NCBI GenBank assembly: GCA_964106915.2
Contig: OZ066918.1
Direction: 5' to 3' (one strand)
Source of the DNA: Podarcis gaigeae
Taxonomy: Eukaryota
Length of the DNA: 64,000 nucleotides
The first letter of the stretch is position 1. Each line of letters starts with the position of its first letter. The translations under genes were made by a program, and so were the position numbers. A model generated the notes under the pieces. The model saw only the letters and a list, made by a program, of their open reading frames with translations. It did not search any database and was not told the origin of the DNA. This document shows, in pieces, positions 7,408 to 50,567 of the stretch.

Positions 7408-8629
7408 TGAGAGGAGCAGGTGAAAGCCTACTTGAACCCTAGTTCATCATTTAGAATGCATGTTAATTTGCCTTATCCTGTGTTCTGTCTACGTTAGAAA
7501 GAAAGGTGCATATAGGTGGGTAAAGTTTGCATGTGCTTCCGAGTCTTGCTATACACATCATGGGCCACTTAGTGCCCGCTTCAGTTTTCTAGTGAAGGGT
7601 GTGCTCTCTAGGGGTGCTTGTATGTTTATGCACACATTTGCACAACTTTAAAGAAATCTGTTCAATGGGTTCTCCTAACCTTTTGGATCAGATTTGGGGA
7701 GGGCACTGGGTGCATGTGGGGGGAGGACAGGTGGGTAAGTGCTGTCGTGCAATCAGGAATCCTTGTGCTAAGAGAATGTGTTAGTTGGATCCCATCCTAA
7801 AAGTCCAATTCATGATTAGAAATGCAGCCTGCTTTGACAGTGAAAAATACCCAGAACTATGGTGCAATCCATTAGGTTTAAAGATGTATTTAAACAATCA
7901 GTAATATGTATTTCTTTAAGACTTCATACCTGCCTTTCACTACAAGATCCCAGGACAGGTTACAACAATATAATACACAGTGACAAAGAAACAAACAAAC
8001 TGTTTTGCTCAACTGGTATTATCATAATTCCCTATATAATTTATATAATTTAAATGCTTGCTATTCACAAGTTGTGATCAGAGCTTAACTGCACACCCTG
8101 TAAAGGCAGCCACCTTTGATTTAGAAAATGAAGAACACAAAAAACTTCTTGCACTTTACAAGATTTCAAATCTAAGAGATAGTTAGCTTAATTATAGGAC
8201 TGCTTAATAAAAGATAAAAAGAGATATTTTAAATACATGTTTAATCTCCATGTCTTATTGCTGTCCAACCTACAGCAGTCTGACCTTCTGGATTATCTTG
8301 TAAATCGTAAGCTTAGTAAAAATGTTTTGCTCAGACACACCGATTCAAGAACTTCTAAATCTGTGTCAACCAGAAATAACTTTACCTTAGATGCCGTTTC
8401 ATTTTAGACATATGGATCAAGGAGACGCCCACATGATAAGCACACACATTGTCACTCACTCAATCACATACAGAAGTCGGGTAATTATAGGAGGCAAGTG
8501 AAGGATTTGAGTCTCTGGAGGAGTCCCCTTTTGCTGTGAATCAGCATCAGAGCTCAAGTCAATGAGTGTTGGCTTCTCTGTGCCATGGTAACACTGAGTG
8601 TTCACAGATGGTTCTCATTTTCCTTCCAG

Positions 8630-8815
8630 GCAGATATTTGGTCCCTTGGAATTACTGCTATTGAACTGGCAAAGGGAGAGCCTCCAAACTCTGACCTGCA
8701 TCCTATGAGAGTTCTCTTCCTGATTCCCAAGAATAACCCCCCGACGCTGGAGGGACACCACAGTAAGCCCTTTAAGGAATTTGTGGAAGCCTGCCTTAAC
8801 AAGGACCCCAGATTT
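8630..8815 (+). CDS. STK25: STK25 exon 7
   Basis: ttccag|GCA GAT ATT TGG ... AGA TTT|gtaagt; [62 protein letters not shown]. Confidence 0.97.
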
Positions 8816-9061
8816 GTAAGTGTTGCTCCAGCCTCTTCTCATAAGCAGAGCCTGAGTGTCAGGTCAGAAAACCTGGCAGCTGCTAGCTAGCAGAGCTCTG
8901 AAATGCTTGTCCCTGGAGATGAGCCCACCCAAGGAATGTGCAGAGTAGGCCTTAGTCCTGTTCCAATTGAAAAGACTCCTTGGAAAGTGGCAGTGGTAGC
9001 TGTCCACCTTTATGGCCCGGTCCCTGCCAGCTAAAACACCTTGTCTCTTGTATTTGTGCAG

Positions 9062-9207
9062 AGACCCACTGCAAAGGAATTGCTAAAGCACAAGTTTATC
9101 ACACGTTACACCAAGAAAACATCATTTCTCATGGAGCTCATTGACCGGTACAAACGCTGGAAGTCAGAGGGGCATGGTGAGGATTCAAGCTCAGATGACT
9201 CTGACAT
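9062..9207 (+). CDS. STK25: STK25 exon 8
   Basis: gtgcag|AGA CCC ACT ... GAC AT|gtatgt; RPTAKELLKHKFITRYTKKTSFLMELIDRYKRWKSEGHGEDSSSDDSD. Confidence 0.96.
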
Positions 9208-9732
9208 GTATGTATGTTTCCATTTTATTTTAAAAACATTTATAACCTGCTTAATATTTTTTAAACCTCTGAGACATTTGTCCTACTTTGAAAATCTTTC
9301 ATTTCTTCCCCTTTCTCCGCACCCAAATAATCAGGGTGTGATTGCTCAGTTAAGTTTCTGCAGATTTTGCATTTGTACCGATAAAGCCTGTAAGGTGGAC
9401 CAGTAAGATTTTATGTAGCTTGTTGAGAAGTACAGATGGGCACAAAAAGCAACGTACGATTTGTCATGCTGGCTGCTTCCAGTCTTTAAATAATTGCATG
9501 GTGACATGGAATATATGAATACCCAGTTCTGGGCTATGACTTTGGTATCTATTGGTACCAAGGACATTCTAGCCCCTAGATAACGGTTGGAAAATGCAAA
9601 CACTGAGTTTGCGTTTAAGTAAGATTAAGCTGGAAAAGCCTGCCGTTGGGGAAGCCCTGCCCCTGCACATCTTGGCACTCCTCTACCCAGTGTTCTTTGA
9701 ATGAAATGCACTCTCACCCCTCTTGTTTCTAG

Positions 9733-9847
9733 TGATGGAGATGCAGATGAGAGAGATCAAGGGCCAATCTGGACTTTCCCACCAACCATTCGTCCCAATT
9801 CCTTGAATAAGCTGCACAAGGGGATGTCTCATCATGGGTCCCAAAAG
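9733..9847 (+). CDS. STK25: STK25 exon 9
   Basis: ttctag|T GAT GGA ... CAA AAG|gtcagt; DGDADERDQGPIWTFPPTIRPNSLNKLHKGMSHHGSQK (WxF motif typical of GCKIII kinases). Confidence 0.95.
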
Positions 9848-10818
9848 GTCAGTGTGGTGTCCATTACCGCTGGGGACCAGAGCCCTGAGCCAGCAGTGGT
9901 CACTCTGAGGGACTGAGCAGCCAGTGTGTGGGAATTGTAGTGTTTCTCCCATTAACCCTGATACTGTCAGAGCAGAACGTATCTTGCTTTAGATTTTGGA
10001 GTCTGCCTATTCTGCTCTGGTTTTTTGTTAACTCATGAAAGATTCCATTTAATGCAGTGGAGCTAGAATGGAGGTCAGGGTTGGGAAACTTTTTTTGGAC
10101 TGGTGGACCAGATCGTTATCTGTCCCCACCCGACTGACAGATGAATTGTCCCTCCCACCTATCCAAGTCCCTTGTGCAGTGCTTCCTAACCACCCAGTAA
10201 CCAGCTGGTTTCTAGGTGCTTGGGAACTATAACACACAAAGCTTTACCAGCTGCCAAGTGCCAAGCATAGGGAAATTGCAAGAAATATGGTTGGCAAAGC
10301 TGCTTTCTGTAGACATTGGCTGTGTGATTGAGTTCTCCACCCAAGCTGTGCCTCTACCTGCCCCACACCTGAAGTCACATCTGATGTCAGGCATGGGGCA
10401 GCTGGGCATGGTTTGAGGAAAATGGGCATTGTTAAGACACATTGGGACCTGTAGCAGGCCAAATTTGGCCCATGGGCTGGAGGTTCCCCATCCCCGATAA
10501 AGGAAGTTTGCTACAAATAGTAATCCTGCTGTTAGTTGCTGCTGCAAAATGGTGTAACACCATACTCTTTGCATACATGTTGCTACTCCTGCCTGTCCCA
10601 TTTATCTGCCTTAGGCTTCTCCTAGGGACCATGTCGGAGCTGCAGCAGAAACTGGAAGATTCTTAACAGATGCTATATCTACTTTGTTCTTTACTGTTCC
10701 TGCTGGTGACAGTAGATTAATGTTGCTTGTCAAAGCAAAGCATTTTCATAGACAGGTTGAAAGAACTGTTCAGAGTCATATTGAATAGCATCCTTCTTCT
10801 TCTTCCTCCTCCTATTAG

Positions 10819-10890
10819 CCTGCTGAGCCTATCAAGCGGCAACCACGGTCTCAGTGTCTCTCTACTCTTGTACGTCCTGTCTTCGGAGAG
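10819..10890 (+). CDS. STK25: STK25 exon 10
   Basis: tattag|CCT GCT GAG ... GGA GAG|gtgagg; PAEPIKRQPRSQCLSTLVRPVFGE. Confidence 0.95.
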
Positions 10891-12283
10891 GTGAGGTGAC
10901 AGGGTCTGAATTTTTTCCAATTATTATCTTTAACATATGAAGTGTTTCTCTGAGGATGTTGGGTTAGAATAATGAGTAGGAGCTGACAACCAAGTGATGG
11001 TAAGAAATGAGACCTTTCACACTTGAATGGTGATTATTAGAATTACCGGTAATCTTTTGCCCTGTTCTGCATCCTTATGATGTGGGAGGCAGCTTGAACT
11101 CTGCAAAAGAGGTTGATCCCTGGATTATGAGCCAGGATCTGTGAGGACAGCTCAAAGCCACTTAATTTGCACAGCCGATGAAGGGGAGAGTTATTGAACC
11201 AGACACATGTTAGGTGGTATAAGAGAACAATATATGGTACAGAGAGTAGGGATCAGACAGGAAGTAATATGTACACAGGGCCAGAGTACTCTAAAGAAGG
11301 ACACGACTGCAAAACATGCACACATTGCTATATCCACAATGGATAGTGTTGTCCTCTGCCTTTCTGGTCTAAATTTGGTAAAATTGGGTCAGCAGTTACG
11401 TAGCTGCATGTATTAAGAAAGCAATGTGTTGTTTAGCTGGAGTTACAAGCTTCCCAGAAACACTGGGCATCACATAGTGAGTGAAGCAACTGGGTGCACT
11501 ATAGTGCTGGGTGGTTGATTGCATACTCTTGCCAACAGCCACAAGGCTGTTGGGTAGGTTTAGTTCCATATAAATAGCTTTAGGAACAGGGTGCAAGTTT
11601 CCTGATATCTAGTGTGCTTAGTTATTACAGCAGTGGCCCGCTCCAGTGAGCATCGTCCAGTTCCGAATCATTATGTGTCACTTGAGTTTGTCGCTTACTG
11701 TAGCTTTAGGCAATTTTTACAGCTAGGCAACATTGCTGTTGCTGCAGCTGATTAATTCTGTATTCTGCTTGTTCAAGGTACTGTTTAAATTTGGCACCAT
11801 TACCAGCCGTCAGCAATAGCATGCTAATCGAAACTGTCTTAGGCACCAATAGAGACCTTTCTGAGTTTCCCTCCTACAGGAGCTAAGTTGCAACTTTGTG
11901 TGTCCACTCAGCCTTGTCTAAAAGATTTCTGTGATGGATGGTATGTGTTTTGGGGAATCACGACCTATGCTCCGATAGGGGAAAGGCTGTTTGTGTGAGA
12001 GGTTATTCCTGTTTATTTCCATTTCTGCCTCAAGCCCCTCCCACCTATGGAATGCAGCCTCCAAAGTTTGAATTCGGCCCTTGGCATGAAAGAGGTTCTC
12101 CACCCCTGTACTACTATGGTCTTAGGGGCTGTGGAACTGGCCCATATTCTAGAGATGCCTATTGTACATCTTTATACAGCAAATGTTTTGGCCTCCCATG
12201 AAAATTGGCATTAAGGATTTTGTGCTGCTACTTAGAGCTTTCTCTTGTTCCATACATTTTGCTTTCCTCTAATGTCTTGGCAG

Positions 12284-12420
12284 CTCAAAGACAAGCACAA
12301 GCACACTGGAGGCAACGTGGGAGCCATGGAGGAACTGGAGAATGCCTTTAGCTTAGCTGAGGAGTCTTGTCCAGGAATCTCTGACAAACTAATTGCACAC
12401 ATGGTAGAGCGAGTGCAAAG
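12284..12420 (+). CDS. STK25: STK25 exon 11 (C-terminal dimerisation / PDCD10-binding region)
   Basis: tggcag|CTC AAA GAC ... CAA AG|gtaaaa; LKDKHKHTGGNVGAMEELENAFSLAEESCPGISDKLIAHMVERVQ. Confidence 0.96.
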
Positions 12421-13034
12421 GTAAAAGTTCTGAGCGTTGTTAACGTGACTATTTTTGGTGAGGATATGGGCTAGAATGAGTAAGAGAAGCCAATCCTACA
12501 CCTTGCCCCTGTACACCTTTCTCTAGTGCTGCTGTTCTTAGTTTGGGCCCAAGATATAGCTGTTTGCTTAGGACCCTAGGCAACTGTCTGGCATTCTGGT
12601 CCTTTGATTGGTGGTTGTGTGGAATGATGAAATCTAAATTATTATTATTAACAACTGTATTTTGCTACTGTCCTTCACCATAAGGTCCCAGGGTAGGTTA
12701 CATCTACAGAAACAGAATACAGCCAACAACTGATTTACATATGTCAAATTGATGTGTGCAACGCAGCGACCCAGAAGTGACTGGAAAAGGGGCTGGGCTT
12801 ATGCATGCTCCACCATCGCATGCCATGACCTGGAACACAACCCCCACACAAATTGAGGGTTGCCTCTACAATGAAAACTTAACCCTCAAAATACAGTTAT
12901 TCTGGGCCAATTAATTTGTTAGCACATGGCCTGGGGCAAACATCTGCATCACCTGCCTGTTAAATTAGGACAGATAAGTTTTTGACAATATTGCTATTCC
13001 TTGTTTACGCTTGAATTTGAAGAAAGTTGGTGTG

Positions 13035-19017: not shown

Positions 19018-19877
19018 CAGTGGTGCCTCGCAAGACGAAATTAATTCGTTCCGCAAGTCTTTTCGTCTTGCGAAGCACGGTTTCCCATAGGAATGCATTG
19101 AAAATCAATCAATGCGTTCCTATGGAAACTGCCTTCTGACCAGGTCCGGGGACAGTCTATCCCCCGACCTCTTCTGAAGGCTGGCGGGGGGCAAAAGTCT
19201 TTGCTTCCACCCCGCCTGCCTTCCCGGGACAGCGGAGACTTCTCCGCTGTCCCGGGGGATCTTAAAATGCTGGCGGGCGGCAGCGCTGCCGCCCGCCAGC
19301 ATTTTAAAATCGCCCCGGGACAGCGGAGGACTTCTCTGCTGTCCTGGGGCGATTTTAAAGCCCCCGGGAAGGCAGGCAGGGGGGAGCAAAGACTTTCGCC
19401 CCCCGCCGGCCTTCAGAAGAGGTCCAGGACCGCCTGCTTCCTGCTCCCCCCCGCCTGCCTTCAAAAGCCGTCCGGGAGAGCGGAGAATCGCAGCGCATTT
19501 CTCCGCTCTCCCGGGAAGGCAGGCAGGGGGGAGCAAAGACTTTCGCCCCCCCGCCTGCCTTCAAAAGCCGTCCGGGAGAGCGGGAAGCGCTTCCCTGCTA
19601 TCCCGGACCGCTTTTAAAATGCTGGCGGTGGGGAGCAAAGCCTTTCGGCCCCCGCCGGTCTTCCTGGACCTCTTCTGAAGGCCGGAGGGGGGGGGAAAGG
19701 CTTTGCTCCCCACCGCCAGCATTTAAAAGAGGTCCCCGGAGATTTCCCTATGGGCGTTCTTCTTGCGAAGCAAGCCCATAGGGAAAATCGTCTAGCAAAG
19801 CGACGCAAAAACCGAAAAACCCTTTCGTCTTGCGGGTTTTTCGTCTTGTGAGGCATTCGTCTTGCGGGGCACCACTG
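19018..19877. mobile_element. Tc1/mariner (Tigger-like) non-autonomous element with GC-rich, internally repeated core
   Basis: TIR CAGTGGTGCCTCGCAAGACG ... CGTCTTGCGGGGCACCACTG, TA flanks; internal direct and inverted repeats, CpG-rich (young). Confidence 0.9.
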
Positions 19878-35717: not shown

Positions 35718-35881
35718 CTTACGCCTTGCCTCATCCTCTTCTTCTATCCTGGCACCACCAACATCGCTCAGAACAGGACTCAAAAGAGGAGATGAACCCT
35801 GGCCAGGTGTGTTCATATTCACATGAAATGAGGGGTTCAGAGTCATTGGACTCTTCATTACAAAGGAAGACAGCTGAGGAC
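35718..35881 (-). CDS. FARP2: FARP2 exon 14 (Ser/Pro-rich linker)
   Basis: acttag|GT CCT CAG ... CGT AAG|gtaagg; (G)PQLSSFVMKSPMTLNPSFHVNMNTPGQGSSPLLSPVLSDVGGARIEEEDEARRK. Confidence 0.92.
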
Positions 35882-41800: not shown

Positions 41801-42726
41801 TTGCATAAACAATTTCAAATTAGTACAAATTTGTGTATATATCATCAATAATTTCAACAGAAAACAAAAAGTATAAAACAAACATCTGGAGTATAAAAAT
41901 GATCATGATCAAAAAGTTGTAGTAAGAATTTCCAGTCCAATAAATGTATTTTTTCCTGAATATGTATCAATTGTACTAAGAAACGCATCATACTAAGGCA
42001 CAAATCATTTGAAGCATAAAGCTTTACTATATGTATGTCCAGTATGTTCTGAACCTTTGCAGTCAGTTGCCAATACAGAGAGTCTGTATTTTTTATGTGC
42101 TCCACATACTAAAGCTATGACTTGGCCCTAAATATGCCAAACTGTTTCTTATGATCTCACTCATACCAATTTTAAGTACTGATGAACCATTGAAAATCAA
42201 ATTCTTCATTAAGTGGATGAACCCCCTAAAATTTCACCAACAAGGAGTAAAATATTTAGCTGGAGCTGAAGTTAAGCGTGAAGAGCTGCAAAAAACTCAC
42301 AATATTAATTTATTCAGCATGTGCATACAAGTATATATACTGCATTAATTGGTTGGGGAGTTGAATATTAAAGGTAAGTGACCACTGTGAGAATCAGTAC
42401 TGAGACATTTGCAATGAAAGCCTAACTATTGCATGTAATACCTGAATGCTTAAGACTCGGCAAAATGACAATAATGGGAATGAATTACCAACAGGTTTTT
42501 AATTAATGCTCTTCTAAAGGCATAACACACACACCATCCATAAGAATATATCTGATAGGAAATTCAATAGTCTTTTAAGGTTAGTAAACTGAATTTAAAA
42601 GTGAACCAGATTGCAAAATAAGCATGTGACTACTCAAGTCAAGTGGTAAATAATTATTAGAAAAAGAAATTGCTTTAATAGCAAATTATATACTCAATTC
42701 TACAATGGATACAACATTATAAATTA

Positions 42727-43349
42727 CCGTATTTTTCGCCCTATAGGACGCACTTTTCCCCCTCCAAAAATGAAGGGGAAATGTGTGTGCATCCTATGGG
42801 GCGAATGCAGGCTTTCAGGAAGCTACCCACAAGTCTTGCAAGCCCGGCGGGAGGTCCCACGGGCTCGCAAGGCTTGCGGGCAGCAGCCTGCAGCCCAAAA
42901 GCTCGGGGGACAGCGGAGAGGCGCAGCGCCGCCCCCCCGCTATTCCTCGACCGGGTCTGGAGGCTGGCGGGGGGGTGGGAGAAGCAAGCTTGCTTCTCCT
43001 CCCCGCCAGCTCCACAAGCTCGGGGGATAGCGGGGAGGTGGAGCGCCGCCCCCCCAGTATTCCCTGACCTGATCTGGAGGCTGGCGGGGGGGGGGGAGAA
43101 GCAAGCTTGCTTCTCCCCCCCGCCAGCCCCACAAACTCGGGGGACAGCGGGACAAGCCGCTGCCCCACGGAGGCTAGAGAAGCTGTCCCTGAAGGCAGAA
43201 GAGGGAGACGGAGCGCTCCGTCTCCCTCTTCTAGCTTGGGGATGGCTGCGCAAACCTGGGGGGGGAATAAATTTTTTTCCCTTGATTTCCCCCCCAAAAT
43301 ACTAGGTGCGTCCTATGGGCCGGTGCGTCCTATAGGGCGAAAAATACGG
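42727..43349. mobile_element. Tc2-group (CCGTA-ended) Tc1/mariner non-autonomous element, young
   Basis: Perfect 27-bp TIR CCGTATTTTTCGCCCTATAGGACGCAC at both ends, TA flanks; GC-rich core with an about 115-bp tandem duplication and hairpins. Confidence 0.92.
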
Positions 43350-46246
43350 TATATGTGGACAGTTCTGCCAAAGCTTAACTGTATATGTTTGTCAATGCAT
43401 ATTCCATCAATCAACTCATCCTTTATTTTTAATTGGGTCAAAATAAATATGTTTAAATACAGAATGATTATAAACCTATAATAATGTCAGTTAAGAATGC
43501 TTTGAGTATATCTGATATAAATCCGAATATTTAAAACTACATACCCATGTACCATAAAGTGCAGTCAAATACTTTATCAGTGTACAATGGAGCAAACTCA
43601 CTTGCATGGATGTTTCTGCAACTATTAAAAAAGCTACCTATTATGTACAGATTTTTGATTTTCCCTAATGTATCTTAGTGTCAGAGGAACATTCACTTTG
43701 TGAATTTGCTCCCCACCTGCCTGTTGACCCCGAAGCAATCAGCTGCTACTTGCTATAATCTGCAACACACATGCACATTTATTTTAAAAACTGGAATTCT
43801 AGGCAAGTTTTTCTACTAACAACCAGATTTGTACTAAGAGAAGTGGGAAATGAGCAAAACAGTAAAAATAATAATAAAACTAGCAAAATTAACGATATCA
43901 CAAGATATGACTAGGGTGAACAAAAATGTTCATCTTCTGTAGCATAGATGGTTTAATACTGAACAAAACAGACTTGAACTATGACAAGTTTCTCAGAAGA
44001 AAATAGAATACACTATGAGAACTAAGAAAGTGCAAGAGATCTCCCCATGGTATAATAAAAAGGGAAATCTTTATACACACGAGCCCAAGGTCTTCCATGA
44101 GGTCTGCAATCAAGAGGCAGAGCAAATCTCTGGTTCCTTACAACTTCTAGATCAGCCCTCCATTGTCCACATTCTGAATTCTTTAAAAAAAACACTACAC
44201 TACTGGAAATTAACCAGCTGACCCAACACATTTTTTTTCTGCTATGCATATCAGTCCCAACTTCAATCAACATAACCTTGCCAGTCCATAACTTCACAGC
44301 TTGGAGATAAAAAGAAGCTGAGTATGGTAATGTGAAATTTATTTTTAACTATATTCCACTAAGAATAAATAACAGGTTCAGACTTACCTAAAAGGTTTGA
44401 GAGTTCAGGAACAATCTCATATTGGGAATGAAGGCAATTTAATGTGTTTAAAACAGAAAAACTATGATGTTGTTAAAAAATACTATTTTTAAAAAAAATG
44501 TTAGACGTTCATAGGGAAGTACCCTACAAGTACTTACAAAACAGAAGGGCATGGAGTCCAAACAAATCCTGAATATTTTACTTAATTTCCAAACATACAA
44601 CATATTTAAGAACAACAGCTACTAGAAAAGTCTCTGGGGAGGTTAACAGGCACATCTAGAAAATGCACCTGCATTTGACCAATCTTGTATTTAATGATGA
44701 TGGTTTTGAATAAAATATGGGTATTGTGCAATGCTCCAAATGGAAAGGAAAAGGTTGCCTGATTTTAGTAACTGAACTGATCTATTCAATAGGAAGCTTT
44801 AACAGGAAATTAGCTGTACTGTCCCAAGAGTTCAGAAGTGGATTGCCATAGATATGTTGTTTCTGAGAAGAAATACAATTACCTCATGTTACCATTTACT
44901 AACCGAAGTTATTTGTACAATCTCGGCGTGTACCACCAGTCATTGATCACGACCAATATCTAATTTTAGAACTCCTAGCCTGTATCAGCAAAGGTGCATG
45001 TATTCTTAACTTTAAAATCTTACTTAAGCAAAGTCCTTTCTGAATTATGGTTGGCAAAAGTAGGGAAAAAAAACCTTTAATCTAGTAATATAATTTTATG
45101 GCATCAGCGTCATAGCTTTAGAATAAGCAAAGCAATACTTAAAATCCAAGTTAAATATAGAATATGAAGACCCAAATTGCAGATATTCTCCACATACCCA
45201 CATGAAGCACAACGTGGCCCTACAGAGTCCTGGTACTTCTCCGAAAAACTAGAGGGGCAGAGATGTCTGATTTTAATTTTTTTTAAAAAAAAAAATCTGA
45301 CATCTAAAGATTGCATTCCATGGTACAGTAAGCCAGCAACTTGTGCACATCCAGCTTTATGTGTTTGGCCCCAAAAACCCCACAAAACCTTTTTTAAAAA
45401 TGGAAAGGATGTCCTGGGGAAAAGACTTTGGCAATCCCACCCGCACTTGAACCCAGTGTGTTTTGCCTTTATGTGATTTGGCTTCAGGTGTGATCCTTGG
45501 AGCGTAACCCCTGGGTTAAGTTGCGGGTTTACTATATGTATTCTTTAATGTGCTACTACCCAACTAGTATAAATTCTTCCTCATTTAACCATTTCAGGCA
45601 CATAGAGCATATCACTACAGGTATAATAAACTACTAGTGAAAGTGAATCTTGTATGCGGAAAGACTCAGAACAAAAAGCAAACTAATTGGCAGCCCGAAG
45701 GCAATCACTCCATTATGCTGAGCTGCACACTGATAAAAATCAGCCTAATAAGAATTTGGTCAGGAGGATTATGAAAGTGGTTTTTTAAAGTATGATAGGA
45801 AATCCACAGTGAAAACACAATTATCACAGGGTACACAAACCAGATGTGCCTGGTTCTCCACCACCACCACAGAAAATCTGGTGAAGTTCATATATTGCAC
45901 AATCTTCCCTTTCACACAGGCATAATTAGGAAATTATAATGGAAAGATACACAAGCCTGTTTAATTAACTCAAGATATAATCCTTTGAGACACAGCCCTA
46001 ACAGTATTTTAGTTTATTTCCTGTACAAGGTTTGCTTTCCTGCTTTGCAACTTAAATACATTCTTCAATGTCTATCAGGAGACCTGAGAAAACCAGGTTT
46101 GCCAACTCTCTTACCGCCATAATATAGTCTTTCAATACCACTTGTATATTCATAGTCTAACAATAATAAGATCATTTCCTTGAAGTAGTACCATCTTCAA
46201 ATAAAAGCTCAAGCAAACCTTTCATATTGATTCAGTTAAGTTACAG

Positions 46247-46368
46247 CAGGGGTGGGGAACCTGTGGCCCTCCAGATGCTGTTCCACTCTATCTCCCATGG
46301 CCAATAGTCATGCATGATGTGATTTGTAGTCCAACAGCATATGGAGGACCACAGGTTCCCTATCCCTG
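46247..46368. mobile_element. Short hAT-type MITE; similar degenerate copies near 1780-1880, 22090-22220, 40750-40875, 58840-58960 and 63967-64000
   Basis: CAGGGGTGGGGAACCTGTGGCCCTCCAGATG ... GGAGGACCACAGGTTCCCTATCCCTG inverted ends. Confidence 0.7.
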
Positions 46369-46820
46369 TCTTATAGGCTTGTTTCTGGAGAGTAATGAGT
46401 TAAAATTCTAACAAAGCACCAACAAAGCAGCACAAAATATACCAATGGCCTTTCAAGACATTTACTGCTCATCAGCAGCAATGCTTTGTAGAGGGTTTGT
46501 TATTTGCAAAGTGTACCTAAGTTCAAATACAGTGATGCAGTGACCTTCACCACAGATGGTTTAAACAATTGCTGGGTGATAAAAAATGTACAATGCATTA
46601 GAAAAATTATAATGGCTAGTCTGCACCACTGACATCTACACTTCAAAGTAGCAACTAATTTATGATGGCTTGAGAAAAATTGGGATAAGGATTTTAAAAA
46701 AGGACATGAATTTGAAATCCAATCACTAGAATGAACCAGGTCAGAAACAATCTACATTATCTTTTCTCTTTCAAAACCAGATTCCCGAAAGCATAAATTA
46801 ACGTATTATCAACCAAAATA

Positions 46821-48044
46821 TTAATGGCTTGTGTGTGTGTCTTCTGTTTTATCTTCCTGGGTGAGATTCTTAAGATTATTCTGAAAATCAAGAGTGAAAT
46901 TCTCTCTAGTAGCCTCAGCAAAGGGGTTGTTGAAAAAGAGGTTTATGTCTAATGGGGCTGCAGTTTCTGAATCCCATGAGTCATCAGTGCTACTAGAGTC
47001 TTCTGTAGTGGTAGGTGGATAGCTCAGCTGTTCCAACTGGTCAATAATGTCAGTGAACTGAAAAGCTGAACTTGACTCAGAGCGAACTGAATATGCTGGA
47101 AAATTCACCATTGAACTAGCTTCAGAGTGATTAGCAGAGCTATAAGTGTGCAAAAATGGCATACCATTTAATGTCAAATTGTTGAGAGAACTACTTTCAG
47201 AACGGTTGTTAATTAATGAACTAGTTTCAGAAGGACTCAGAAGACTTTGCATTCTGCTTGCCTGAGCTTTAACTTCAAACAATTCCGAGGTATCAGATGG
47301 CTGTTCATTCCCATTAAAATCACTCTCTCCTTCAAATTCAAACTCATGGTCCATGTTCATATCTACTGCTTCTATGGAGCACCTATCAGGACTTGACTGA
47401 GAAGACATCATATTTCTTTGCAGAATTTCTTTAGTTAAAGCAGGTGACTCTGAGAGACAATTAGTTAGATCTGACTCCTGCAAATCTAAACCATCATACA
47501 AATAGGAAAATGCTTCAGAACCTCCAGCAAAAAAGGACATTTCTGCTGGATCATCATCAATGAACTCTTCTGAAACCTGAAGCTGGGAGCTAACTAGTTT
47601 TACAAGTGAGGCACCCCTACCTTGAGGCAGATGCTGTTTAGCAGCAATGGCCATACCTGTGGTAAAGTCATCCACATAATTGTCATTTTTACAAGTAATC
47701 CTACCTTCTACTGCTTCACCTAAACCACAGCTACTCTCAACATTAGTACAAGTGGGAGTGCAGTTTTCTGCAACATTACAAAGCCCAACACCTTGGAATG
47801 ACTGGAGTACTGGTGATCCAGGCTGCTGTATCACTTTCTTCCCAGTTTCTTCTGATGTCCCACTATTTGCTTCTGCGGCCAAGCTCCTTGTATGGGATAT
47901 TCTGGGCTCCAAAAATAAAGGCTTGCTCTCTGTGAAAGTGGGCAAGCTGGCAATGTTTGTGGCTAACGCATTATCCGAATGAAAGGAGGCATATGTACAT
48001 GCATTAGGCCCAGAGGTTCTTAATCCATCTGTAAATGAGGCACT
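46821..48044 (-). CDS. FARP2: FARP2 exon 13 extended as alternative terminal exon (407 aa + stop; acidic Ser-rich tail)
   Basis: Frame stays open 971 nt beyond the 47792 donor to TAA at 46821 (419-aa ORF of the track minus its intronic first 12 codons). Confidence 0.75.
   Translation of the reverse strand, partial: SASFTDGLRTSGPNACTYASFHSDNALATNIASLPTFTESKPLFLEPRISHTRSLAAEANSGTSEETGKKVIQQPGSPVLQSFQGVGLCNVAENCTPTCTNVESSCGLGEAVEGRITCKNDNYVDDFTTGMAIAAKQHLPQGRGASLVKLVSSQLQVSEEFIDDDPAEMSFFAGGSEAFSYLYDGLDLQESDLTNCLSESPALTKEILQRNMMSSQSSPDRCSIEAVDMNMDHEFEFEGESDFNGNEQPSDTSELFEVKAQASRMQSLLSPSETSSLINNRSESSSLNNLTLNGMPFLHTYSSANHSEASSMVNFPAYSVRSESSSAFQFTDIIDQLEQLSYPPTTTEDSSSTDDSWDSETAAPLDINLFFNNPFAEATRENFTLDFQNNLKNLTQEDKTEDTHTSH
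47792..48044 (-). CDS. FARP2: FARP2 exon 13, canonical spliced form (253 nt, weak donor)
   Basis: cctcag|AGT GCC TCA TTT ACA GAT GGA TTA AGA ... TTC CAA G|gtgttg; phase-1 exit matches exon 14; SASFTDGLRT...QPGSPVLQSFQ. Confidence 0.8.
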
Positions 48045-49372
48045 CTGAGGAGAAAAACAAGAGAGGAAGCTATTAGACAATCTGTTTTAGGATACATCTA
48101 ACCATGTCCACTTGATTTGACAGATAAACATGTTTATAAGTTCATGAATTTTACCGAGATGACTTGACTGTGAAGACTGTGGGACTCATCCTTGCCTGTT
48201 TTCAGTGTGAGAGACACTACCGCATGACAAAGGTGGGTGAATCGGTGCCCTCTGCTTTATCTATGGCATTTTAAATCTGGCTCAAGTGTTCAGTCATCCA
48301 TGATTTGTATTAATTTTAGAAAAAAACATATTGCGCCAACTTTTTAAAGGTAACCATTTCATTGAGTCTTGAGCTTTGAAAACCTATTTCTTCAGATATG
48401 GTGGAAGGATACATGCATTATGTGACTATTAGACATAGGCAGATTGTATTGATCACTCACTGGTTTCTCTAGATTTTCATGTCTGTTTTGCATTCATTCC
48501 TTTATTATTTATGTAGAAGTGGCCCTGTTTGGTTTTTATAAAATGGCAGTGGGAATCATTGTGAGGTGATGTATCTTTATTATATGAAATTGAGGATGAA
48601 TGAACTCTTCATAGTATGACTAATGATGTTTTCCAGATATAATTTTCGGAGTAGATGAATGGAGAAAACTGGCCCTGGGTTTCTTACAGATAACTCTTCC
48701 TCCTAAGGTCTACATGAGAGTACTATGTTGGTTTAGAATTCTGGATTTGGGACCAGAGAAAGCTGATTCATTATATGACTGTGTTAACTGTAACAGTAAT
48801 TATGCATGAAATCTTGACACTCTGAAATGGCATCTATAGAAAAGTTTTTGTTATTGCAACAGTAAGGAGATTAATTTTCTATACAATGGTAAATCATATT
48901 GATAATGAACTACAGCTCCTGGCTGATAAAGATATACGAATTATTTAGGACCAAATATTGATCTGGATCCAAAGAACGGCGTTGTTCCATGTGCCCCAAA
49001 AAAGATTCATGCTTTTAGAACGGCGCCCCCATCCACCCATATATATTCCATGTAGCAAATTTCCTTTGCAAGTAGGTTTTATATGCAGTTTGCAATATGG
49101 CACGGAGCTCTGCCATTCAAAAGAAAAAAGCTAAAAATTCCCTGGGCAAACACTCAGGAAAAATTGTTTTCCTGTACAAGCTGAAAAACTCTGAAGTTGA
49201 TTCAACAGTACACACATATTTCACATTACTACCAGAATTGGACAAGGCTGAACAGAGCAATGATTGAAAATATATATAATTTTAAATGCAGACGTCATTC
49301 ATGCTTTAGAATGAAAAGGCTGAGTTTCATAATCTTTCTGATAATTCAAAACAGGTTAATATCAAGACTAAC

Positions 49373-49430
49373 CTGTTTGGGTGTATCAGCATGCAAGGTG
49401 TGAGCAGACATTCTAGTTTTACTATGCCTC
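49373..49430 (-). CDS. FARP2: FARP2 exon 12
   Basis: ttacag|G AGG CAT ... AAA CAG|gttagt; RHSKTRMSAHTLHADTPKQ. Confidence 0.92.
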
Positions 49431-50323
49431 CTGTAAAGAAAGAATATGCTGTGATATCCTGATCACTTCATTAGCTATATACAGAAAGCACACGGGGGGG
49501 CCTACAGTAAGAAGCTATTCCTGAAGAATAACCTACTTCATAAGGCTGTTAGGTGTGAAAAAGATCAATAGTAATAAATCAACGAGCCTCAGAATTTTGT
49601 CATTCATGGATAATTGTATCTGTTAGACACAGTGACTGCAAATTATAATTTTAACTAGAGAGAGAGCAAAAATGTATTTCCATATTCTGTAAGTTTCAAC
49701 ACAAATATCTAAAATACAAATCCAGGATAGGACACATTTTTAACATTCAAAAAAATGCTTAAAATGTTTATTCATGTGGTCCAGATGCTCAAGATCTGGT
49801 ACACCTCTCCAAACTCTCAATAGCCAATTTTGGGGTGTGCAGGGGGCTGCAGAATGGAAGAAGAATGACCAGAAATCATCTCCCTCCCTGTTCTGCTGAC
49901 GGATGCTTTTTTGTCAGCAAAAGGGAAGCTCTGGATACCATCCGGTAAGTATAACAATGAGCAAATGCAAGATGGTTTACAACATTGGAACAAAAAAAAG
50001 ACGACATGTCTCCAGTTGGCACTATGTGAAGGAAAGTGAAGTTTAAGCCAACATATTTTCATGCCATTCAATCAAATCACTTTTCTGAATTTGAAACATG
50101 TTAAATGGTTTGTCAATTTCAGCTCCATCCTACGCAACATAATTCCCAGTGTCAAGTATCTAAGCATTTTAATTAATTAAATTTGAAATATAAAAATGTC
50201 AAATAATACTTTAACAGTTTACAATCTCTAGGAAAAAATGCCTTTCATTATTGTAGACTAGACTAAGGAAGTTACAAAATAAGAACATCAAAGACTCTTT
50301 GCTTATATAAAAGAGCTTGTTAC

Positions 50324-50392
50324 CTTTCATATGGGATTTTTTTCAACCCACTTTCTTTAACATAATCCACCAATTGTTTCTGTGTACGCCCA
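50324..50392 (-). CDS. FARP2: FARP2 exon 11 (FA domain)
   Basis: tcacag|T GGG CGT ... GAA AG|gtaaca; GRTQKQLVDYVKESGLKKIPYE. Confidence 0.95.
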
Positions 50393-50567
50393 CTGTGAAG
50401 AAATAAATGTGAATGTTACAAAAAAATCTCCAGGAAAAGTACATAACATTCTGGGCTTCTTGTACTCAAGAAATAAAGATCCTAAACCTTTAATTTAAAA
50501 GGAATTACTTTCAAAGTTTTTCTTAGTTCCATTTTCTTGGATCAAAATGAACTGGGTTATATCATAC

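What the first reader, a model, noticed from the sequence alone, without database searches (positions are those of the whole stretch)
46821..48044. FARP2 exon 13 reads through into a 323-codon extension: a hidden GEF-less, FRMD7-like isoform
Seen: the exon starting SASFTDGLRT has a weak phase-1 donor (CAAG|GTGTTG, 47792) that fits exon 14, yet the frame stays open another 971 nt to TAA at 46821 in AT-rich, non-transposon DNA. With random codons 323 stop-free codons has probability about 2e-7. The tail is acidic and Ser-rich with motif-like islands (EEFIDDDPAEMSFF, FQFTDIIDQLEQL, DDSWDSE, LFFNNPF). Known: FRMD7 is the FARP1/2 paralog made of FERM-FA plus one large terminal exon, with no DH-PH-PH, and it lies next to STK26 as FARP2 does to STK25 and FARP1 to STK24. 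Inference: this locus makes two proteins, the full RhoGEF and a roughly 790-aa FERM-FA-tail protein. That may be the ancestral dual output, of which FRMD7 kept only the short form; it could be a scaffold or a competitor for FERM partners.
Basis: partly seen in the sequence, partly recalled or inferred. Interest (0 to 1): 0.88.

Follow-up and report, generated by a model that had tools for sequence, protein, structure and literature searches.

The report
Ancient GEF-less short FARP2 isoform
The signalling gene FARP2 makes a second, abundant protein of about 800 amino acids that keeps the membrane-binding part but replaces the catalytic half with a conserved acidic tail; its sister gene FARP1 does the same, and the nystagmus gene FRMD7 looks like a copy that kept only this short form.

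Summary
Confirmed and extended. FARP2 exon 13 reads through a weak donor (47792) into a 323-codon tail. The tail is conserved from squamates to sharks (dN/dS 0.09-0.15 in its core), and the weak donor sits at the same place in lizard, bird, mouse, frog and fish. Stranded RNA from a close relative covers the tail and at least 2.3 kb of 3'UTR, with no reads in the two upstream introns; tail depth is about half that of the shared exon. Spliced cDNA contigs exist for mouse, bird, frog and fish. It is not hidden from databases (mouse D3Z4C0, 795 aa), but I found no paper on it. FARP1 has the same read-through, with a homologous tail (hhalign 95%); a published 800-aa mouse Farp1 proteomic isoform is probably it. 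The FARP1 tail matches the FRMD7 C-terminus (97%, mostly two motifs); FARP2 and FRMD7 tails do not match directly. FRMD7's last exon starts at the same junction. C. elegans frm-3a/b has the same layout. Function is untested; a disordered membrane scaffold is most likely. The scan had not noted this elsewhere in this genome.

The parts
50323..50396 (-). FARP2 exon 11 (FA region), spliced to exon 12
   Evidence: junction reads 50323>49429 in three runs
49373..49429 (-). FARP2 exon 12, ends ...PKQ, phase 0; same junction and phase as the start of FRMD7's last exon (DVSKQ|V)
47792..48044 (-). Exon 13, part shared by both isoforms (253 nt)
   Evidence: junction reads 49373>48044; homology
47786..47794 (-). 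Weak internal donor AAG|GTGTTG, phase 1; AG|GTG at the same place in squamates, bird, mouse, frog and fish
46821..47791 (-). Coding extension of exon 13: 323-codon acidic, Ser-rich, disordered tail ending at TAA
47514..47570 (-). Conserved island 1 (EEFIDDDP...FFAGGSE), shared with the FARP1 tail
47178..47231 (-). Conserved island 2 (SETSSL..NN.SESSSL.N)
46995..47126 (-). Conserved island 3 (SEASSM.NFP..SVRSE.SS.FQF.D..DQLEQLS.PP), includes a short predicted helix
46920..46985 (-). Conserved island 4 (DSW.S ... LF..NP)
44500..46820 (-). 3'UTR of the short isoform, covered by stranded RNA reads to the edge of the stretch laid; true end further on
42460..42532 (-). Conserved non-coding block matching the very end of a bird short-isoform cDNA contig (39 nt, 97%); candidate 3' end, not mapped
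35718..35881 (-). Exon 14, phase-1 acceptor, entry to the DH-PH-PH exons of the long isoform; intron 13 is 11.9 kb
8627..12424 (+). STK25-type kinase exons, tail to tail with FARP2, as an STK26-type kinase is with FRMD7 in locus L013

Best explanation
Exon 13 of FARP2 is a composite internal/terminal exon. When the weak donor at 47792 is used, the 11.9-kb intron is removed and the known FERM-FA-DH-PH-PH exchange factor is made. When it is skipped, the transcript runs on, is ended inside intron 13 after a 3'UTR of several kb, and encodes a protein of about 800 aa: FERM-FA plus a disordered acidic tail with four conserved motif islands. Shown: frame, selection, donor conservation, spliced stranded RNA, full-length cDNA contigs. 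Inferred: competition between the weak donor and an intronic poly(A) site sets the ratio; escape from NMD because the stop is in the last exon; translation of the FARP2 form. This dual output predates the vertebrate duplications that gave FARP1, FARP2 and FRMD7: FARP1 keeps both outputs, FRMD7 kept only the short one. The short protein most likely works as a membrane scaffold, placed by FERM-FA and recruiting its own partners through the tail motifs, rather than as a plain dominant negative (about 65:35).
For: Tail homologues in reptiles, birds, mammals, frogs, coelacanth, ray-finned and cartilaginous fish. dN/dS 0.09-0.15 in the tail core against 0.27-0.28 in the shared exon part; DNA indels within squamates are multiples of three. 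Sense-strand RNA depth 5-18 over the tail, zero in introns 11 and 12; one 3073-nt contig joins exons 11-12-13 through the stop. Mouse 6.4-kb cDNA contigs with the 795-aa ORF in 89 blocks of the collection; bird, frog, fish, squamate cDNA contigs. FARP1 read-through at a phase-1 ACAG|GTCCAG donor in paddlefish and mudminnow genomes, intact proteins in Ascaphus (811 aa) and carp (719 aa). hhalign FARP2 tail-FARP1 tail 95%, E 2e-8; FARP1 tail-FRMD7 C-terminus 97%, E 1.4e-11; all 22 FRMD7 tails score 10.6-40.2 bits on the FARP1 profile against a best shuffle of 8.0 in 462. FRMD7's last exon starts at the same phase-0 junction, with no GEF remnant before the convergent kinase gene. Mouse Farp1 800-aa isoform with nine intron-specific peptides in 132 brain samples (PMC8248162). 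C. elegans frm-3b arises by splicing inside the last frm-3a exon, and FERM-FA alone rescues receptor clustering (PMC7260190). FRMD7 is recruited by CASK (PMC3633374).
Against: No direct FARP2-FRMD7 tail match (hhalign E 0.38). The FARP1-FRMD7 match rests mainly on two short C-terminal motifs, one of them low-complexity; masking it drops most scores near the shuffle range. The FARP1 profile has only 8 partial rows. RNA comes from a related species, not this genome's own; the 47792>35881 junction and the poly(A) site were outside or not visible in the reads. No peptide evidence for FARP2's tail. I could not confirm that the published Farp1 isoform is the exon-13 one (no supplement held). No invertebrate or lamprey tail was found. 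No partner is known and AlphaFold shows no docking of the tail on FERM.
Confidence: 0.78

Rival explanations
1. Same isoform, but its main job is to compete: it occupies FERM-FA partners (plexins, aPKC, CASK, membrane lipids) without GEF activity and so damps FARP2 signalling; the tail serves stability, localisation or phospho-regulation.
For: It keeps the whole FERM-FA and lacks DH-PH-PH; it is about half of the transcripts in two RNA runs. A short afadin isoform acts this way (PMC4436838, abstract).
Against: A pure decoy would not need four motif islands kept since sharks with dN/dS near 0.1. In C. elegans the short form rescues rather than opposes (PMC7260190).
Confidence: 0.2
2. The extension is mainly a large internal cassette: a downstream donor near the end of the tail splices to exon 14, giving a GEF of about 1350 aa; the stop-containing form is a by-product.
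For: Many predicted proteins of 1220-1395 aa hold tail plus DH-PH-PH; birds and turtles share a donor at FAQAT-G; the window has in-phase donors at 47705, 47657, 47621 and 47165 that score above 47792.
Against: The junctions of those models differ from species to species, as gene predictors produce. The bird donor has no GT in this window, in two other squamates or in mouse. RNA depth does not drop across the stop codon and continues 2.3 kb beyond. cDNA contigs in five lineages end in the UTR, not in exon 14.
Confidence: 0.07
3. The FARP2 isoform is real, but FRMD7's C-terminus arose independently; the similarity to the FARP1 tail is convergence of Ser/Asp-rich motifs.
For: No direct FARP2-FRMD7 match; the signal weakens when the ESSDSDS motif is masked and is slight in the N-terminal half.
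Against: Two different motifs in the same order and spacing at the same end; collinear alignment over 257 columns; shuffles that keep local composition do not reach the scores; same exon boundary and phase, same kinase neighbour.
Confidence: 0.2
4. Unspliced pre-mRNA or a chance or transposon-derived open frame without a protein.
For: None beyond the weak donor.
Against: Zero depth in neighbouring introns, spliced upstream junctions on the same contig, purifying selection, protein conservation across jawed vertebrates, no Pfam or repeat match.
Confidence: 0.01

Closest known systems
Database-only short FARP2 isoforms (mouse UniProt D3Z4C0, 795 aa; Dasypus RefSeq isoform X2; Xenopus laevis farp2.S isoform X1; zebra finch A0A674GXH6)
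   Same: Same exon-13 read-through, same tail; these are its orthologues.
   Different: They are unreviewed models; nine paper searches found no study of the isoform, its conservation or its function.
Mouse Farp1 800-aa 'intron-retained' isoform (Li et al. 2021, PMC8248162)
   Same: Paralogue, about the same length, translated intron sequence; probably the FARP1 exon-13 extension found here (811 aa in Ascaphus).
   Different: Reported as intron retention with possible loss of function, not as an ancient terminal exon; FARP2 is not mentioned; identity with the exon-13 tail not confirmed.
C. elegans FRM-3A / FRM-3B (PMC7260190)
   Same: One FARP locus, a short FERM-FA-tail form and a long GEF form made by splicing from inside the short form's last exon; synaptic scaffold role with LIN-2/CASK.
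   Different: No sequence link between the worm and vertebrate tails was found or testable; the layout could be convergent.
FRMD7 (X-linked infantile nystagmus)
   Same: FERM-FA plus one large last exon starting at the same junction and phase; convergent STK24/25/26-type kinase neighbour; C-terminus similar to the FARP1 tail.
   Different: Separate gene and separate FERM clade, no GEF exons, no direct similarity to the FARP2 tail. Its C-terminus was described as without homology to other proteins (PMC3633374).
Composite terminal exons made by intronic polyadenylation (for example soluble FLT1, PMC2926593)
   Same: Skipped 5' splice site, read-through into the intron, new C-terminus and 3'UTR.
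   Different: Here the added coding part is 323 codons, under selection across jawed vertebrates and shared between paralogues. That such tails are usually short is from my own knowledge.

Membership tests
FARP2 gene (versus FARP1) | Exons closer to FARP2 than to FARP1; STK25-type neighbour | tested here: met
   tblastn sum 2157 bits with a bird FARP2 against 1010 with a mammal FARP1; kinase exons at 8627-12424
Composite terminal exon isoform | Internal 5' splice site used for the long isoform | tested here: met
   Phase match to exon 14; same junction in turtle, mink, sifaka and catshark proteins; depth halves past the donor. Junction reads themselves not seen.
Composite terminal exon isoform | Mature spliced RNA continues through the donor, the stop and a 3'UTR | tested here: met
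Composite terminal exon isoform | Poly(A) site inside the intron | tested here: inconclusive
   No pile-up of ends within 44500-50490; candidate conserved block at 42532-42460 matches the end of a bird contig that finishes in a run of A
Protein-coding exon | Purifying selection and frame-keeping indels | tested here: met
   dN/dS 0.09-0.15 in the core, 0.07-0.29 over the whole tail; first 70 codons near 0.6-1.1
Protein-coding exon | Peptides or ribosome footprints | not testable with these tools
   Only indirect: paralogue peptides in PMC8248162
FRMD7 | FERM domain in the FRMD7 clade | tested here: not met
   Orthologous short isoforms group with FARP2, 100/99 support
FRMD7 | FRMD7-type C-terminus (SQSD, EFRPLG, ESSDSDSE, SGSLQL) | tested here: not met
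   hhalign E 0.38; profile scores at shuffle level. The FARP1 tail does match.
FRMD7 | FERM-FA plus one large last exon from the (S/P)KQ phase-0 junction, no DH-PH-PH | tested here: met
FRM-3A-type scaffold | Binds CASK/LIN-2 and clusters receptors through FERM-FA | not testable with these tools
   Literature only (PMC7260190, PMC3633374)
Folded domain or known Pfam family | Confident fold or family hit for the tail | tested here: not met
   Pfam none, PDB none, Atlas none, AlphaFold pLDDT 50 alone and about 30 in the full protein

The most novel reading that the evidence does not exclude
FARP1, FARP2 and FRMD7 descend from one dual-output locus, possibly as old as bilaterians (FRM-3A/B). FARP1 and FARP2 still each make an abundant, unstudied GEF-less scaffold of about 800 aa, and FRMD7 is that isoform fixed as a gene. 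The 'unique' FRMD7 C-terminus then has living homologues, and phenotypes of Farp1 or Farp2 knockouts credited to GEF activity may partly belong to the short proteins.
Probability: 0.65. Interest if true: 0.72.

Novelty: new variant of a known kind. Interest (0 to 1): 0.62.

Why it matters
FARP2 is studied as a single Rho-family exchange factor in semaphorin signalling, polarity and osteoclasts. About half of its transcripts in the samples read here encode a protein without the catalytic half. A published Farp2 knockout deletes the promoter and first exons (10.1101/2020.01.15.908434), so it removes both forms and cannot separate them; the same holds for N-terminal antibodies and probes. The tail offers four motif islands conserved since sharks as direct baits for partner searches. 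The FARP1 bridge gives FRMD7's C-terminus, where truncating nystagmus mutations are reported (PMC10811807, abstract), its first homologues and points at two motifs to test; it also names candidates for the redundancy that was proposed to explain why FRMD7 loss affects so little of the brain (PMC3633374).

Tried and rejected
Pfam, PDB sequences, ESM Atlas and Rfam gave nothing for the tail or UTR. A full phmmer scan of 1.84 billion representatives returned FARP2 tails and one low-complexity algal protein, no FRMD7 or FARP1; the FARP1 link needed a profile. Direct FARP2-FRMD7 tail homology was rejected. The stronger-scoring donors at 47705, 47657 and 47621 were rejected as the conserved switch because they are lineage-specific. 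Tail-plus-GEF models were judged mostly prediction artefacts. AlphaFold of the full short isoform gave no sign of the tail folding back on FERM, so autoinhibition has no support. The FERM tree has no outgroup and cannot order the duplications. Loose-end tables were filled by a short repeat at 46241-46289, so the exon 13-14 junction could not be read. No genomic DNA was obtained for shark or ray. The supplement of PMC8248162 is not held. Human sequences: P0372 is labelled human FRMD7 and was left out of all comparisons; P0314 was scored once before I took it for human FARP1 and was dropped afterwards; human FARP2 was not examined.

Full report
Observation. On the minus strand an acceptor at 48044 opens a frame of 407 codons that ends at TAA 46823-46821. 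The first 253 nt are FARP2 exon 13; a phase-1 donor AAG|GTGTTG follows base 47792. Exon 14 lies at 35881-35718 with a matching phase-1 acceptor, so intron 13 is 11.9 kb. The 323 codons beyond the donor are stop-free with probability 6e-10 given local composition, while the other frames hold 19 and 52 stops. The gene is FARP2, not FARP1, and by similarity the genome is a squamate's (best tail hits 81-84% to lizards).

The tail is a real coding exon part. Homologues were found in geckos and other lizards, snakes, tuatara, turtles, birds, marsupial and placental mammals, frogs, coelacanth, bichir, sturgeon, teleosts, elephant shark and a stingray. Four islands are nearly invariant. Pairwise dN/dS is 0.09-0.15 in the core, lower than in the shared part of exon 13 (0.27-0.28); the first 70 codons of the tail are close to neutral. 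The donor AG|GTG stands at the same codon in two other squamates, a bird, mouse, a frog and a fish, whereas three better-scoring in-phase donors further on are lineage-specific. It is among the weakest donors of the gene, and its weakness is conserved.

It is transcribed as a mature terminal exon. Reads of a close relative (about 97-99% alike in coding parts) are strand-specific for the gene's sense, show the exact junctions 50323>49429 and 49373>48044, cover the tail and the 2.3 kb after the stop, and leave introns 11 and 12 empty. Correcting for exon length in the bins, shared-exon depth is about 24 and 20 in two bulk runs and tail depth about 12 and 10: roughly half of the transcripts read through. 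This is a rough figure from two samples. One contig of 3073 nt joins exons 11, 12 and 13 through the stop. Independent spliced cDNA contigs with the complete short ORF exist for mouse (795 aa, 6.4 kb, 89 blocks of the collection), a bird, a squamate, a frog and a fish. The 3' end was not mapped; a conserved block at 42532-42460 matches the end of the bird contig, which would give a UTR of about 4.3 kb, like the 3.9 kb in mouse. The long isoform's junction was not visible in the reads but is present in orthologous proteins.

Paralogues. A search with a divergent frog FERM domain retrieved FRMD7 and FARP1 proteins. The FARP2 tail profile hit no FRMD7 but hit a paddlefish FARP1. Genomic loci show that FARP1 exon 13 also runs through a weak phase-1 donor (ACAG|GTCCAG) into a long extension in paddlefish and mudminnow, with exon 14 several kb downstream; intact products are on record for Ascaphus (811 aa) and carp (719 aa), and manatee and vole models hold parts of it. 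Profile comparisons: FARP2-FARP1 tails 95%, E 2e-8, anchored on the EFIDDDP island; FARP1 tail-FRMD7 C-terminus 97%, E 1.4e-11; FARP2-FRMD7 none. Against shuffles that keep local composition, four of five FARP1 tails score 29-39 bits on the FARP2 profile (best shuffle 5.7) and all 22 FRMD7 tails score 10.6-40.2 on the FARP1 profile (best shuffle 8.0). The FRMD7 signal is concentrated in two C-terminal motifs and weakens when the Ser/Asp-rich one is masked, so this link is likely, not proven. In a bird locus FRMD7's last exon begins at DVSKQ|V, phase 0, the same junction as FARP2's PKQ|S; no GEF remnant lies between it and the convergent kinase gene, whose exons match the STK25-type gene in this window.

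Mechanism. Shown: two splice outcomes at one composite exon, a conserved weak donor, an abundant GEF-less mRNA. Inferred from established RNA biology: a poorly recognised 5' splice site before a long intron lets cleavage and polyadenylation in the intron win part of the time; the stop lies in the last exon, so junction-dependent NMD is not expected. The protein is FERM-FA plus a tail that is acidic (54 D/E against 15 K/R), Ser-rich and predicted disordered, with two short helices at most. Conserved islands in a disordered chain are most simply binding or phosphorylation motifs. I favour a membrane scaffold over a pure competitor because a decoy would not need them, because worm FRM-3A rescues receptor clustering (PMC7260190), and because FRMD7 works by CASK-dependent membrane recruitment (PMC3633374). 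No partner was identified.

What is known. The isoform is in unreviewed databases for many species, so it is not new as a sequence. Nine literature searches found no study of it; the library lacks most subscription papers. The nearest reports are an 800-aa mouse Farp1 isoform with nine intron-specific peptides (PMC8248162), which I take to be the paralogous form without being able to confirm it, and the C. elegans frm-3a/b pair, where the long form is spliced from inside the short form's last exon (PMC7260190). FRMD7's C-terminus has been described as having no homologue (PMC3633374). The mechanism class, a composite terminal exon, is well known.

Verdict. Real, ancient and abundant; a new variant of a known kind. 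The new content is the synthesis: both FARP genes keep a dual output and FRMD7 appears to be the short output fixed as a gene. Interest 0.62.

Noticed in passing
window 23755-23591 and about 22976-22860 (-): Two similar exons in the PH1-PH2 linker; one protein segment hits both. Fits the mutually exclusive pair noted earlier as s1-689191.
   Followed up: partly
window 47705, 47657, 47621, 47165 (-): In-phase donors inside the tail that score above the conserved one; 47165 matches the junction of two bird protein models (LNG|). They could give minor GEF isoforms with longer linkers.
   Followed up: partly
L011:23470-23720 and L012:49400-49560: The FARP1 tails of paddlefish and mudminnow each change frame at or near a homopolymer run, and the paddlefish copy has a further stop; assembly error or decay of a duplicate is not resolved.
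   Followed up: partly
P0393, P0331, L011, L012 (FARP1 short form C-terminus): Ends in a conserved VFSC from frog to fish, which looks like a PDZ-binding end; the FARP2 short form has no conserved C-terminus.
   Followed up: no
window 46241-46289: Short interspersed-repeat fragment inside the 3'UTR that draws many unrelated reads.
   Followed up: no
window 19100-19780 and 42680-43350: Two GC-rich (60-65%) internally repeated elements with open frames on both strands, probably copies of one mobile element; the second would lie inside the long 3'UTR if that ends near 42460.
   Followed up: no
window 45544-45113 (-): A 144-codon stop-free stretch inside the 3'UTR; read data from the relative show frame-breaking indels there, so probably chance.
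   Followed up: partly
P0191, P0192, P0194: Bird protein models fusing a septin domain to the short FARP2 form; most likely merged predictions of neighbouring genes.
   Followed up: no
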